Both the position numbers and the translations under genes were made by a program. Positions 25,091-28,129 of a stretch of DNA of 64,000 bases are shown here, piece by piece. Where the stretch lies: IMG/VR virus record IMGVR_UViG_3300042923_000281, positions 186,001 through 250,000 of that record; one strand, given 5' to 3'. Below the pieces are notes generated by a model. It did no database searches, had not been told where the DNA came from, and worked only from the letters and a program-made list of their open reading frames with translations. The first letter of the stretch is position 1, and each line of letters starts with the position of its first letter.

Positions 25091-25538
25091 TCTTTCTCCT
25101 GCTGTCGCCTAAGGCAACTGTGATGTCTGCCTCGATGAACGGATAGATGGCGCGGTAGACGTACTGAATGTCTTCCTCCCAATCCAATCCGCCGTGGCCA
25201 CAACCCATGGGTGGTAAGACGATGCGTCCAAGTCTGTGCCGGCTGGCCAAGACTGCTATCTTGTTGATGTGATGAACGACCAAGCTACGCGGAGAGGCAT
25301 CTCGCCAGTCCAGTTTGGTCGGCACCAACAGGTAACGCATGTCTTCGTGTTTATACGAGATGATGTTGCCCGGTTCGATGGTTGGATACATCTTGCGGTA
25401 GTGCTTGTGAAGCCCTGGGACCGTGTTACGGGCGGTTCGAGCCACACCGGCTCCCATTGCCCCGACCAGATTGATCGTGATCACACGTGTATCAGCAGGG
25501 ACGTCAAATAGATCCTGCTCCACGATCTTTAATGACAT
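25077..25538 (-). CDS. Macrodomain (ADP-ribose processing, DarG/TARG1-like)
   Basis: INLVGAMGAGVA, PTK..W and LPPMGCGHGGLDW motifs. Confidence 0.8.
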   Translation of the reverse strand: MSLKIVEQDLFDVPADTRVITINLVGAMGAGVARTARNTVPGLHKHYRKMYPTIEPGNIISYKHEDMRYLLVPTKLDWRDASPRSLVVHHINKIAVLASRHRLGRIVLPPMGCGHGGLDWEEDIQYVYRAIYPFIEADITVALGDSRRKNGRS

Positions 25539-25998
25539 GTTCAACCGCCTCGGTAAAGCAGCTTGCTAAGAAGGCTGCGGTGATGGGGGTATGAGACGGG
25601 ACAGTGATGGTCCAGACATGGCCCACGTGCTGGAACTCCCGTGCTACCAATCGTAGCCGATGTTTAAGGTGGATCTGACTGACCAATGAATCGATGTGAG
25701 GGTTACCGGACACGAATCCAGTGAACGTCATCACGAGATCCGCTAAGAAGTCTAACCCCTCCTCAGTCACGAAGAATGCACAGTAGAACTGCTTCTTCGT
25801 TTTGCCTTCCTCATGATGCGACGCACAGCAGTCTGTGGTCATCACACCGGGTTGTTCGTTCAGCAATGCCACTGCCTGTTTCAGTTCAGGGTCAACGAGG
25901 CTGTAGGGTGCCGAAGGATCGTTGAGGAGCTGTACCTTACGGTAATCATCCAATGCTTCTTGAACATTGGTGAGCTTGCCAGCAGCAGATAATTTCAT
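25504..25998 (-). CDS. Hypothetical protein with TYW3-like motif
   Basis: VDPELKQAVALLN..GVMTTDCCASH resembles the D..LN....TTSSC.G motif of the TYW3 fold; early promoter upstream. Confidence 0.45.
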   Translation of the reverse strand: MKLSAAGKLTNVQEALDDYRKVQLLNDPSAPYSLVDPELKQAVALLNEQPGVMTTDCCASHHEEGKTKKQFYCAFFVTEEGLDFLADLVMTFTGFVSGNPHIDSLVSQIHLKHRLRLVAREFQHVGHVWTITVPSHTPITAAFLASCFTEAVEHVIKDRGAGSI

Positions 25999-26056: not shown

Positions 26057-26077
26057 AGGGAGGGCCGAAGCCCTCCC
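26057..26077 (-). terminator. cUUCGg hairpin terminator (near-identical copies at about 18092, 20465, 34798, 36732, 37840, 53410)
   Basis: GGGAGGG-CTTCGG-CCCTCCC immediately after a stop codon. Confidence 0.75.
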
Positions 26078-26078
26078 C

Positions 26079-26489
26079 TTACTTTTTCTTTCCGTTGCCT
26101 TGACCCGCGACACCACCCATCAACTTGTTGACCTCGGTATCCTCTTTCGTGGAGACCGTGTCACAACGCTTGAGAACTGCTTCTGCACGATCGCGAGGCA
26201 TCTTCATAAACGTGTCAAGTGACATGCCGGTGTATTTGAGTACGTTGGCAACCAAGTATCGCTCAAGGTACACATCGAACGGATCAACCAATGCCAGATC
26301 TTCGGATTCGTGCATCGCAATCGAAGCGTAAGGACTCATGCCCTGTGAGCTTTGATCGTGAACACCGAAGTAATCGTCGTAACACTCCGTGATGATGATC
26401 TGAGCTGGAATGCTGTCAAGAGTCCCTTCGAACTTTGACAGCACTTCATCAAGAGCAGTGATGCTCTCTTTGTCTTCCAGCTTATCCAT
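26079..26489 (-). CDS. Tail-assembly-chaperone 'T'-like ORF, probably expressed by -1 frameshift from the upstream gene
   Basis: No clear SD; frame stays open upstream through the T_TTT_TTC site; TGMSLDTFMKMPRDR resembles chaperone T-domain motifs. Confidence 0.55.
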   Translation of the reverse strand: MDKLEDKESITALDEVLSKFEGTLDSIPAQIIITECYDDYFGVHDQSSQGMSPYASIAMHESEDLALVDPFDVYLERYLVANVLKYTGMSLDTFMKMPRDRAEAVLKRCDTVSTKEDTEVNKLMGGVAGQGNGKKK

Positions 26490-26530
26490 CCCGAACCGAC
26501 GATCACCAGCATGGTAGCCTAACGGAAGGG

Positions 26531-28129
26531 TTAGACTGCCGCGCCTTCTACTTGGCTGATCTTCAGTGCGGCTAGGGTGAAAAAAACGTAACCGATGTCG
26601 ATTGGGATCAAGTACGGATGCGTTTGATCTTCAGGCTCCTTCTGGCACGCCGGGCACTTGACTTTCGGCAGGCCGATGTAGGAGACCGTCGACTTCTTGA
26701 TCCACTCGAGGATCTCGTTGGTGAACTTGTCGCCCACCTCAGGATCTTCAGACAGCATCTCGAGGATGCGGTCCTTGTTGACCAGGTCATCGTAGATGAT
26801 CGGCGCTGCATCAGGATCGAGCGCATGCTCGAAATGATCGACCCAATGGCCGTACTGACGCAGGTTCGTCAACGCACCACTGCGCATGATGTGTCGCATG
26901 CGGTCCATCTCAGAGAGACGGGCGCCGAACGCATCGTTGGTCGCTTTGGAGATACCGTCGACCCACACGTGGCCGCCATCGATCTGGGCTGCCAGCGAAG
27001 TCACCTTCAGCACAGCAGTCAGGCCCTTGCCCAGCGGAACACGTTTCTCGTAGAACGGGAACTCCGCTTGGTATTCAGCCAGCCACTTCGCATCACGCTT
27101 GGCGCTACGAGAGGCCATCTTCAGCGCTTGGCTTGGGGTGATCTTGGCGCGGTCAACAAAGCCCATACGAGCAAAGTTGATCAGCACTTCGTCGACGTGC
27201 TTGCACTTGTCTGGATCGGCCACGCATGGCTGACGCAGTGGGTAGCCGTCCGGGTACATCGCACAGGCCAGACCCCACATCACTTGCTGGTAGTCACGGC
27301 TGCGGATCACTTCCATCAGCTCGTCAACGGTATCGCCGGTTTCGAAGGCGTAGTTGACGGAGACGATGTGCTCCAGCGCGAATCGCATGTAGGTTTCAAC
27401 GGTGTAGACTTCCACCGAGGAGAACACCATGCCGTTCGAGGAACGACCGAGGTTCATCTTCTCCATGCGGGTCTTCTGTTCGAAGTCCAGCAGCGCTTGG
27501 ATGGTCGGGGCACGGAATGTCACCCACAGACCAGTGTTCCACAGCGGCACCTGCACCATCGAGCCTTGGCCGAAGGTTGCACGGATTGCCATGACCGGGT
27601 CTTTCATGTTGGCAGGCTTGACCTTACCAGCACCCAGACGGGTCTCGTTGTGCAGCACGGTGTTGTGCCAATCGCCTTCACCGTCGATGCCGTCGAAGTA
27701 CATGTCCTGCCACACGGCAGAAAGCGTACGGGACAGGTTCACCAGACGACGATCTTCCGGGGAGAGGGACTCAGCCTTTTCTTTACTGAGTTCGTTCAGA
27801 CCACGGTGATCCATGATCATTGCCATCTCGTCCATGCCCACTTTCAAAGCCACGAGGCCAGGACGTGCAGGGTCGAGTGACTGACGCTTGAACATTGGTT
27901 CGGTCAGGGTGACGTGAGGGTTCGGTTTATCGAACTGATCCCACAACCCTTCGATTTCCATGGTGACTTCAGGTGTTTGTTCTGCTGGAGGCTTAGCAGT
28001 GGCCGCTGCTGTGGTGGCTTGGGCAAACGCATCAGCGCTCTGAGAGCTGTCAACGTTTGGCACCAAGTTGGACGTATCCAACTCCACCTCATCCATTCCT
28101 TCATTCTGGGGTTTCTGGTCGTCGCTCAT
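26531..28129 (-). CDS. Conserved protein (phiKZ gp77-like), probable tail/baseplate-hub assembly chaperone
   Basis: 532 aa with FRAPT, C..C and CPAC Zn motifs reminiscent of T4 gp26/gp51-type chaperones; slippery site near the 3' end. Confidence 0.55.
   Translation of the reverse strand: MSDDQKPQNEGMDEVELDTSNLVPNVDSSQSADAFAQATTAAATAKPPAEQTPEVTMEIEGLWDQFDKPNPHVTLTEPMFKRQSLDPARPGLVALKVGMDEMAMIMDHRGLNELSKEKAESLSPEDRRLVNLSRTLSAVWQDMYFDGIDGEGDWHNTVLHNETRLGAGKVKPANMKDPVMAIRATFGQGSMVQVPLWNTGLWVTFRAPTIQALLDFEQKTRMEKMNLGRSSNGMVFSSVEVYTVETYMRFALEHIVSVNYAFETGDTVDELMEVIRSRDYQQVMWGLACAMYPDGYPLRQPCVADPDKCKHVDEVLINFARMGFVDRAKITPSQALKMASRSAKRDAKWLAEYQAEFPFYEKRVPLGKGLTAVLKVTSLAAQIDGGHVWVDGISKATNDAFGARLSEMDRMRHIMRSGALTNLRQYGHWVDHFEHALDPDAAPIIYDDLVNKDRILEMLSEDPEVGDKFTNEILEWIKKSTVSYIGLPKVKCPACQKEPEDQTHPYLIPIDIGYVFFTLAALKISQVEGAAV

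What the first reader, a model, noticed from the sequence alone, without database searches (positions are those of the whole stretch)
26079..26590. Programmed -1 frameshift creating a G/GT-type chaperone pair in a core chimallivirus gene
Seen: 15 codons before its stop, the 532-aa gene reads GTT TTT TTC (heptamer T_TTT_TTC, 26585..26579). The -1 frame is open for 30 codons (HPSRTEDQ...RRFG) straight into the SD-less 136-aa ORF, giving a fusion of about 683 aa. A GCCGC/GCGGC stem starts 6 nt downstream, followed by an AGTCTAAC/GTTAGGCT hairpin. Known: long-tailed phages make tail-assembly chaperones G and GT this way. Inference: this assigns a function to two hypothetical core genes. No tape-measure gene is adjacent, which is atypical.
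Basis: partly seen in the sequence, partly recalled or inferred. Interest (0 to 1): 0.7.

Follow-up and report, generated by a model that had tools for sequence, protein, structure and literature searches.

The report
Conserved frameshift in jumbo-phage core gene
A core gene of nucleus-forming jumbo phages (phiKZ gp77 family) almost certainly makes a second, 150-residue-longer protein by a ribosome slipping back one base on a run of Ts, which merges two 'hypothetical genes' into one and appears to be unannotated and unreported.

Summary
On the minus strand, the 532-aa ORF (28129..26531) carries T_TTT_TTC at 26585..26579, 15 codons before its stop. The -1 frame runs open through the 136-aa ORF, giving a 683-aa fusion.

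Comparison makes chance untenable. In 95 distinct orthologous loci (GC 31-59%):
- The conserved Phe-Phe is always TTT-TTY, or CTT-TTT in one clade.
- The 0-frame stops 8-44 codons later.
- The -1 frame stays open for 149-181 codons.
- The first possible start codon wanders from 13 to about 150 codons downstream. A near-invariant aromatic residue lies upstream of it in 37 of 57 loci.

T4-like gp26 genes have the homologous Phe-Phe as non-slippery TTC-TTT.

The gene is Chimalliviridae core gene cg18 (phiKZ gp77, listed as hypothetical). Its confident AlphaFold model matches no solved structure. It does resemble T4 gp26-family baseplate-hub assembly chaperones by fold and embedding, but not by sequence profile.

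The frameshift is strongly supported. "G/GT-type" holds only as an analogy: it is not a lambda G/GT relative and not in a tail module. No protein-level evidence exists yet, and no record or paper I could search reports it.

The parts
26531..28129 (-). 0-frame gene, 532 aa (P0001). Orthologue of phiKZ gp77, which is Chimalliviridae core gene cg18. This is the short isoform.
   Evidence: The AlphaFold model has pLDDT 88.6 and pTM 0.86. Its fold and embedding resemble the T4 gp26 family.
26579..26585 (-). Slippery heptamer T_TTT_TTC. The 0-frame codons are GTT TTT TTC, encoding V515 F516 F517, and sit in a run of 7 T.
   Evidence: The hexamer TTT-TTY is conserved in 89 of 95 loci and CTT-TTT in the other 6. 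Elsewhere in the same genes Phe is TTC 973 times against TTT 568 times. T4-like gp26 genes encode the homologous FF as TTC-TTT or TTC-TTC in 35 of 36 loci.
26531..26578 (-). Dual-coding overlap. In the 0-frame it encodes the last 15 residues (TLAALKISQVEGAAV, part of predicted terminal helix 512-531) plus the stop. In the -1 frame it encodes the start of the linker.
   Evidence: The nucleotides are almost invariant within the close clade.
26079..26579 (-). Extension read in the -1 frame after the slip: 166 codons (P0046) plus the stop at 26081..26079. Joined to residues 1-517 it gives a 683-aa long isoform.
   Evidence: The extension is 149-181 codons long in all 95 loci. The model is mostly helical, pLDDT 74.6.
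26490..26507 (-). Codons for G-D-R-R-F-G in the -1 frame, upstream of the ATG at 26489. They contain the near-invariant aromatic residue F29 of the extension.
   Evidence: F29 is at least 90% conserved in A2: F in 55 and Y in 2 of 57 loci. It lies upstream of the first ATG/GTG/TTG in 37 of 57 loci. The D-R-x-F-G motif is kept through synonymous changes (GAT/GAC, CGT/CGA/CGC/CGG, TTC/TTT, GGG/GGC/GGT) among relatives.
26079..26489 (-). The 136-aa ORF as a gene caller would list it (ATG 26489). It is interpreted here as the C-terminal part of the long isoform.
   Evidence: It matches PHROGs of unknown function only.
26538..26572 (-). Candidate stimulatory stem: GCCGC (26572..26568) paired with GCGGC (26542..26538), starting 6 nt after the heptamer.
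   Evidence: In 11 close relatives the stem is kept with G-U wobbles only and shows no compensatory change. No shared downstream structure was found across the wider family. Status: inconclusive.
26515..26537 (-). Hairpin AGTCTAAC / GTTAGGCT enclosing the 0-frame stop codon.
   Evidence: It is not conserved in phage pPa_SNUABM_DT01.
26058..26077 (.). G+C-rich hairpin (8 pairs, loop of 4) directly after the stop of the extension. Probably marks the end of the transcription unit.

Best explanation
The gp77-family gene encodes two proteins from one mRNA.

Most ribosomes read the 0-frame to the stop at 26531 and make the 532-aa short form. A fraction slip back one nucleotide while the two Phe-tRNAs occupy TTT-TTC within U_UUU_UUC (26585..26579). 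They continue in the -1 frame for 166 codons and make a 683-aa long form. In the long form the last 15 residues (the end of a predicted terminal helix) are replaced by a linker of about 40 residues, carrying a conserved H-V...F-G motif, followed by a helical domain of about 125 residues. The '136-aa gene' is therefore mainly the C-terminus of the long form.

- Shown: the sequence arrangement and its conservation across the family.
- Inferred: that the shift is ribosomal rather than transcriptional, and its efficiency.
- Inferred from predicted fold and embedding only: the core is a distant, enlarged relative of T4 gp26, so the pair probably acts as a non-virion assembly factor for the baseplate hub. 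The extension would supply an extra binding surface at a fixed sub-stoichiometric ratio, as the T part of lambda gpGT does.
For: **Anatomy**.

**Conservation**, 95 distinct loci from 22 GenBank jumbo phages of nine or more host genera, 80 IMG/VR contigs and the window itself, GC 31-59%:
- Slip hexamer TTT-TTY in 89 loci and CTT-TTT in 6.
- 0-frame stop 8-44 codons later.
- -1 frame open for 149-181 codons in every locus.

**Nucleotide-level selection:**
- Phe is mostly TTC elsewhere in the same genes (973 against 568).
- The base before the hexamer is T after codons for V, T, I, L, G, N and A.
- T4-like gp26 genes have the homologous FF as TTC-TTT in 31, TTC-TTC in 4 and TTT-TTT in 1.

**The -1 frame is translated upstream of any start codon:**
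- The first ATG/GTG/TTG lies 13 to about 150 codons after the slip.
- It is at codon 85 in phiKZ, 68 in RAY, 77 in Ea277G, 137 in L084 and 152 of 154 in L070.
- F29 is conserved (F 55, Y 2 of 57) and precedes that start in 37 of 57 loci.
- D-R-x-F-G is kept by synonymous substitutions.
- In phiKZ the homology begins about 40 codons before the annotated ATG of 076.4.

**The short form also matters:** its post-slip tail TL(A/L)..K/R is conserved and modelled as a helix.

**Bulk mRNA is unedited:** RNA-seq contigs from three runs span the junction of a phiKZ-like genome with 7 T and no indel.

**Function:**
- The AlphaFold model has pLDDT 88.6.
- BFVD matches to gp26-like 'baseplate hub assembly' proteins have E from 2e-4 to 1e-2 and target TM-scores of 0.5-0.58.
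- An Atlas cluster carrying PF12322 matches at TM 0.48-0.50.
- 85 of the 100 nearest named clusters by embedding carry PF12322.
- Both families share a C-terminal IP..CxxCG...FF.L pattern.
- T4 gp26 is listed as a hub assembly chaperone (PMC3004832).
Against: - There is no protein-level evidence (mass spectrometry, western blot or ribosome profiling) for the long form in any phage.
- No downstream stimulatory structure is shared across the family. In the close clade the stem shows no compensatory change.
- About 20 of 95 loci lack the canonical first T of the heptamer or have only 5-6 T. One clade uses G_CTT_TTT.
- From my own knowledge, U_UUU_UUY is not among the most efficient bacterial -1 sites.
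- In this particular phage an ATG exists at 26489, so independent initiation cannot be excluded as an additional route.
- The gp26 link is not supported by sequence profiles: hhalign probability 2.6-11%, and no Pfam or NCBIfam hit.
- The gene lies beside head and virion-RNA-polymerase genes, not in a tail module.
Confidence: 0.75

Rival explanations
1. Transcriptional slippage. The phage or host RNA polymerase stutters on the T run and adds one U to a fraction of transcripts. Ordinary translation of those transcripts then gives the same fusion protein.
For: The conserved element is a homopolymeric T run of 5-9, most often 7-8. No conserved RNA stimulator was found. These phages transcribe middle and late genes with their own unusual polymerase (my own knowledge), and its slippage behaviour is unknown.
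Against: Twenty of 95 loci have only 5-6 T, and PS119XW and one IMG/VR clade have 5. From my own knowledge that is too short for known polymerase slippage. RNA-seq contigs of a phiKZ-like phage show the unedited T7 form only, but contigs drop minor variants, so this is weak.
Confidence: 0.12
2. Two separate genes. The downstream ORF is translated on its own, from ATG 26489 or by termination-reinitiation after the gp77 stop. The T run is only the codons of a conserved Phe-Phe.
For: In this window an ATG exists 30 codons after the slip. A GGTGATC stretch complementary to the 16S rRNA 3' end lies 11 nt upstream of it. All 20 annotated GenBank records looked at annotate two genes.
Against: - The start-codon position is not conserved, and many loci have no start before the conserved domain.
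- Conserved residues and synonymous-only changes lie upstream of the starts.
- The downstream ORF is in the -1 frame with no intervening stop in 95 of 95 loci.
- The TTT codon choice at the slip is invariant against a TTC-preferring background, and differs from the same dipeptide in T4-like gp26 genes.
Confidence: 0.08
3. Artefact. A homopolymer sequencing error or a recent pseudogenising frameshift has split a single 683-aa gene.
For: Homopolymer runs are error-prone on some sequencing platforms.
Against: The same -1 relationship is found in 95 independent assemblies and isolates from many platforms and years, with T runs of five different lengths. The 0-frame tail after the slip is itself conserved. 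Four contigs encode the identical 532-aa product.
Confidence: 0.01

Closest known systems
Lambda gpG/gpGT and the conserved tail-assembly-chaperone frameshift of long-tailed phages (Xu, Hendrix and Duda 2004; cited from my own knowledge)
   Same: A -1 shift on a slippery heptamer near the end of a non-virion morphogenesis gene gives a short form and a C-terminally extended form at a fixed ratio. The arrangement is conserved across phages whose sequences have diverged beyond recognition.
   Different: No sequence or fold relationship was found. The core is 532 aa rather than about 140 aa. It is not placed between tail-tube and tape-measure genes. The slippery sequence differs (U_UUU_UUY against lambda's G_GGA_AAG). 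Any role towards a tape measure is untested.
T4 gp26 family (PF12322, 'gp26 family baseplate hub assembly chaperone')
   Same: Predicted fold and language-model neighbourhood agree. Both share a C-terminal CxxC followed by a conserved Phe-Phe near the end. T4 gene 26 also yields two polypeptides, gp26 and gp26'.
   Different: gp77 is 2.5 times longer. Profile comparison is not significant and there is no HMM hit. T4 makes its second product by internal in-frame initiation, and its Phe-Phe is the non-slippery TTC-TTT.
T7 gene 10A/10B capsid frameshift (my own knowledge)
   Same: A -1 shift on a U-rich site (G_GUU_UUC in T7) a few codons before the stop gives a minor, C-terminally extended isoform.
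   Different: That case is in a capsid protein, the extension is about 50 residues, and the family is unrelated.
E. coli dnaX tau/gamma
   Same: A -1 ribosomal frameshift in bacteria that sets the ratio of two isoforms of an assembly factor.
   Different: In dnaX the shifted product is the shorter one, the heptamer is A_AAA_AAG, and well-defined upstream SD-like and downstream hairpin stimulators exist. None was demonstrable here.

Membership tests
Programmed -1 ribosomal frameshift site | In-frame slippery heptamer X_XXY_YYZ | tested here: met
   T_TTT_TTC at 26585..26579. It is canonical in about three quarters of 95 loci; the rest have A/G_TTT_TTY or G_CTT_TTT.
Programmed -1 ribosomal frameshift site | Overlapping -1 ORF that is conserved and shows coding constraint up to the slip site | tested here: met
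   The -1 frame is open for 149-181 codons in 95 of 95 loci. Conserved residues and synonymous-only variation lie upstream of any start codon.
Programmed -1 ribosomal frameshift site | Stimulatory element: a downstream hairpin or pseudoknot, or an upstream SD-like sequence | tested here: inconclusive
   A candidate stem begins 6 nt downstream in this clade but shows no compensatory changes. No element is shared across the family. Pseudoknots were not modelled.
Programmed -1 ribosomal frameshift site | Trans-frame protein detected, and the shift shown to be ribosomal | not testable with these tools
   Only RNA contigs were available. They show unedited T7 as the main form. No proteomic data could be searched.
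Lambda G/GT-type tail assembly chaperones | Sequence or fold membership in a tail-assembly-chaperone family | tested here: not met
   No Pfam, NCBIfam or named-PHROG hit. None of the listed fold matches bears a G/GT-type tail-assembly-chaperone name.
Lambda G/GT-type tail assembly chaperones | Gene pair located between the tail tube and tape measure genes | tested here: not met
   In phiKZ and DT01 the neighbours are the gp78-like and gp79-like ('structural head protein') genes, a virion RNA polymerase subunit, and small hypothetical genes.
Lambda G/GT-type tail assembly chaperones | Short and long forms made by a -1 shift near the 3' end of the first ORF | tested here: met
   By sequence and comparison only; see the rows above.
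T4 gp26 family (PF12322, T4_baseplate) | Match to the family HMM or profile | tested here: not met
   No PF12322 hit at E <= 10 in the protein or in the whole 277-kb genome. That genome search also failed in its control genomes. hhalign A1 against A3 gave probability 2.6%.
T4 gp26 family (PF12322, T4_baseplate) | Shared fold | tested here: met
   Predicted models only. Foldseek against BFVD gave probability 1.0, E from 2e-4 to 1e-2 and target TM-scores of 0.5-0.58 to about 250-aa gp26-like proteins. A bridging Atlas cluster of 542 aa with PF12322 in 14% of members matched at TM 0.48-0.50. By embedding, 85 of the 100 nearest named clusters carry PF12322.
T4 gp26 family (PF12322, T4_baseplate) | Required for baseplate hub assembly | not testable with these tools
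   The orthologue's gene number (Goslar gp81) does not occur in the Goslar virion-structure preprint. That is consistent with a non-virion factor but is no proof.

The most novel reading that the evidence does not exclude
All nucleus-forming jumbo phages (and many uncultured relatives: 1,460 protein clusters) regulate baseplate-hub or tail assembly with a frameshift-made pair of isoforms of an enlarged gp26-like chaperone. This would be a second, independently evolved counterpart of the lambda G/GT system. The helical extension would act as the adaptor that recruits a structural partner, and the slip efficiency would set the stoichiometry. It would also show that core gene cg18 is really a two-product gene, and that the 'gene' downstream of it in every annotated genome is not a gene of its own.
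Probability: 0.35. Interest if true: 0.8.

Novelty: new member of a known kind. Interest (0 to 1): 0.7.

Why it matters
- **Annotation.** It corrects the annotation of a core gene in every Chimalliviridae genome. None of the 20 annotated GenBank records inspected joins the two ORFs. In phiKZ, RAY, Ea277G and others the downstream 'gene' is annotated with a start inside or outside its real domain.
- **Function.** It gives the first functional lead for cg18, currently listed as a hypothetical protein: a gp26-like hub-assembly factor.
- **Recoding.** It adds a deeply conserved recoding signal, U_UUU_UUY, maintained from 31% to 59% GC. It can serve as an annotation rule and as a natural test case for frameshifting without an obvious stimulator.
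- **Testability.** The hypothesis can be tested directly in tractable systems: phiKZ in PAO1, Goslar in E. coli, and PCH45 in Serratia.

Tried and rejected
- **Sequence-level assignment.** Pfam, NCBIfam, PHROGs and PDB sequence searches gave nothing informative for either part.
- **Solved-structure searches.** Foldseek against PDB and VIA-align over 48,161 chains gave only helix-fragment matches with Z of 6.1 or less.
- **Profile comparison to T4 gp26.** Not significant.
- **PF12322 in the window's own genome.** Found nothing, but the control genomes also failed, so the result is uninformative.
- **Extension domain.** Its model matches only its own orthologues.
- **Downstream RNA structure.** Single-sequence folds of 25 orthologues have z-scores scattered from -4.9 to +1.2 with no common architecture. 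The clade alignment shows no covariation.
- **Transcriptional slippage test.** Only assembled RNA contigs were available. The single raw-read run held no reads of the phage, so minor T8 transcripts could not be measured.
- **Frameshift in T4 gene 26.** Rejected: its FF is TTC-TTT and the -1 frame stops at once.
- **Literature.** Searches for a prior report found none: phiKZ gp77 with frameshift; PHIKZ077 and 076.4; Chimalliviridae with ribosomal frameshift; jumbo phage with slippery; phiKZ with tail assembly chaperone. The library covers open-access papers only.
Full report
**1. Observation**

On the minus strand, the 532-aa ORF (28129..26531, P0001) reads ...GGT TAC GTT TTT TTC ACC... The heptamer T_TTT_TTC occupies 26585..26579 and 15 sense codons follow before TAA. 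The -1 frame is open from 26630 to the stop at 26081..26079. After the slip it reads 30 codons (HPSR...RRFG) and then the ATG of the 136-aa ORF. The fusion would be 517 + 166 = 683 aa.

**2. Identity of the gene**

- tblastn finds relatives in 217 phage records, all jumbo phages of Pseudomonas, Erwinia, Salmonella, Serratia, Ralstonia, Klebsiella, Vibrio, Burkholderia and others. phiKZ PHIKZ077 is among them at 27% identity.
- The closest isolate is Pseudomonas phage pPa_SNUABM_DT01, at 72%.
- Prichard et al. list this gene as core gene cg18 of chimallin-encoding phages (Goslar gp081, phiKZ gp077, RAY gp267, 'hypothetical protein'; supplement of PMC10299810).
- An exhaustive HMMER search finds 1,460 clusters at 50% identity.
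- The window lies in a complete 277-kb IMG/VR virus record with terminal repeats.

**3. Comparative test of the frameshift**

I fetched the orthologous junction from 22 GenBank phages and 80 IMG/VR contigs and scanned them by script. There are 95 distinct loci, GC 31-59%.

- (a) The near-invariant Phe-Phe (F516, F517) is encoded TTT-TTY in 89 loci. One clade of 6 has Leu-Phe encoded CTT-TTT.
- (b) The T run is 5-9 long (7 in 48 loci, 8 in 23).
- (c) The 0-frame stops 8-44 codons later.
- (d) The -1 frame is open for 149-181 codons (median 163) in every locus.
- (e) Elsewhere in the same genes Phe is TTC 973 times and TTT 568 times. Other Phe-Phe pairs in the same tails are TTC-TTT or TTC-TTC.

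The extension has a near-constant length when measured from the slip site. The first in-frame ATG/GTG/TTG, in contrast, lies anywhere from 13 to about 150 codons downstream. It is at codon 85 in phiKZ, 68 in RAY, 77 in Ea277G, 137 in L084, and 152 of 154 in L070.

In the alignment of 65 extensions an aromatic residue (F29 of P0046) is at least 90% conserved. It is F in 55 and Y in 2 of 57 loci, and it lies upstream of the first possible start codon in 37 of them. In the window itself it lies upstream of the ATG at 26489.

Among 11 close relatives the motif D-R-x-F-G just before that ATG is kept while third codon positions vary: GAT/GAC, CGT/CGA/CGC/CGG, TTC/TTT, GGG/GGC/GGT. That is the signature of selection on the -1 frame protein.

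In phiKZ the -1 frame is open for 171 codons in a 37%-GC genome. Homology to the window's extension starts about 40 codons before the annotated ATG of PHIKZ076.4, and there is no in-frame start in between.

These facts cannot be reconciled with an independently initiated downstream gene, nor with sequencing error.

**4. A natural negative control**

T4 gp26-family proteins end with a homologous ...CxxCG...FF.L. In 36 T4-like loci that Phe-Phe is TTC-TTT (31), TTC-TTC (4) or TTT-TTT (1). In 32 of them, the TTT-TTT locus included, the -1 frame stops immediately; in the four TTC-TTC loci it runs 136 codons into gene 25, at a site that is not slippery. The slippery codon choice is therefore specific to the clade that has the -1 extension.

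**5. Mechanism**

The simplest reading is tandem -1 slippage of two tRNA-Phe on U_UUU_UUY. About 20 loci have A or G in place of the first U, or the G_CUU_UUU variant. There only the A-site tRNA re-pairs perfectly.

I found no stimulator common to the family. The GCCGC/GCGGC stem is retained in the close clade, but only with G-U wobbles, so its role is open.

Transcriptional slippage on the T run would give the same protein. It is disfavoured by the 5-6-T loci. It is also disfavoured by RNA-seq contigs of a phiKZ-like genome (L107), which carry the unedited T7 in three runs. Contigs hide minor variants, however, so this rival keeps about 0.1.

**6. What the proteins are**

With a 119-sequence alignment, AlphaFold gives a confident model of the 532-aa form: pLDDT 88.6, pTM 0.86, with residues 1-46 disordered. 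Four nearly invariant cysteines (C302, C309, C492, C495) suggest a metal site. The slip site lies at the start of the terminal helix 512-531, so the long form loses the end of that helix.

- No solved structure matches.
- Against predicted viral structures, the hits after the orthologues are proteins of about 250 aa annotated as T4-like baseplate hub assembly protein, subunit or chaperone. They have probability 1.0, E from 2e-4 to 1e-2 and target TM-scores of 0.5-0.58.
- The ESM Atlas gives a bridging cluster of 542-aa proteins, of which 14% carry PF12322 (TM 0.48-0.50).
- By language-model features, 85 of the 100 nearest named clusters carry PF12322.
- Sequence profiles do not confirm this: hhalign probability is 2.6-11%, and only the IP..CxxCG stretch aligns. 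There are no HMM hits.

I therefore call the protein a probable distant, enlarged gp26-family member, not a demonstrated one. T4 gp26 is classed as a hub assembly chaperone whose presence in the particle is uncertain (PMC3004832). T4 gene 26 also gives two products, by internal initiation.

The 166-residue extension models as a short beta-hairpin (the H-V...F-G region) plus a helical domain (pLDDT 74.6). It matches only its own orthologues, so its role is unknown.

The orthologue's gene number (Goslar gp81) does not occur in the Goslar virion-structure preprint. This fits a non-virion factor but does not prove it.

**7.

The frameshift and the orthology were right. 'G/GT-type' is right only as an analogy. 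The family, size and gene context all differ, and the defining features of G/GT membership that could be tested were not met. The phiKZ partner is 076.4 plus unannotated upstream codons, not gp76.

**8. Novelty**

None of the 20 annotated GenBank records examined joins the two ORFs. RAY annotates an overlapping gp266, and phiKZ annotates a truncated 076.4. Five literature searches and four targeted readings found no mention of a frameshift in this gene. The library covers open-access papers only.

The mechanism is of a known kind. The family, and the fact that it is a universal core gene of nucleus-forming phages, appear to be new.

**9. Confidence**

| Claim | Confidence |
|---|---|
| A trans-frame long isoform is made | about 0.9 |
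| It is made by ribosomal -1 slippage | about 0.75 |
| The pair functions in baseplate-hub or tail assembly | about 0.45 |

Noticed in passing
L002 3966-4481 (phiKZ, record AF399011 71442-71957): PHIKZ076.4 is annotated from an ATG that lies inside the conserved extension domain. About 85 codons of open, homologous -1 frame upstream of it are unannotated.
   Followed up: yes
L011 2412-2960 (Erwinia phage RAY gp266): The RAY record annotates the downstream gene as overlapping gp267 by 136 nt. The start appears to have been chosen upstream of the slip site, apparently to cover the long open -1 frame.
   Followed up: partly
L116, L118, L119, L121 (T4-like IMG/VR contigs), end of the gp26-like gene: In these T4-like phages, gene 25 lies in the -1 frame of gene 26 with no stop between the C-terminal Phe-Phe and gene 25 (136 open codons). 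The dipeptide is the non-slippery TTC-TTC. In T4 itself the two genes overlap by one base (TAATG).
   Followed up: partly
window 26501-26507 (minus strand): GGTGATC is fully complementary to the 3' end of 16S rRNA. It sits 11 nt upstream of ATG 26489, inside the conserved G-D-R codons, and is kept as GGTGATC in 5 of the 11 sequences of the alignment, the window included. It could be an internal Shine-Dalgarno-like element or a by-product of the coding sequence.
   Followed up: no
window 26058-26077: A strong G+C-rich hairpin (GGGAGGGC-loop-GCCCTCCC) lies immediately after the stop of the extension. It looks like a terminator for either strand.
   Followed up: partly
window 25504-25544 (minus strand): The next two ORFs (164 aa, 25998..25504, and the following one starting at TTG 25544 or ATG 25538) overlap by 35-41 nt. 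The ATG has a GAGG 9 nt upstream, so this looks like an ordinary overlap and not a second recoding site.
   Followed up: partly
P0001 residues 302, 309, 492, 495: Four nearly invariant cysteines, far apart in sequence, suggest a structural metal site. The last two form a CxxC that aligns with the CxxC of T4 gp26.
   Followed up: partly
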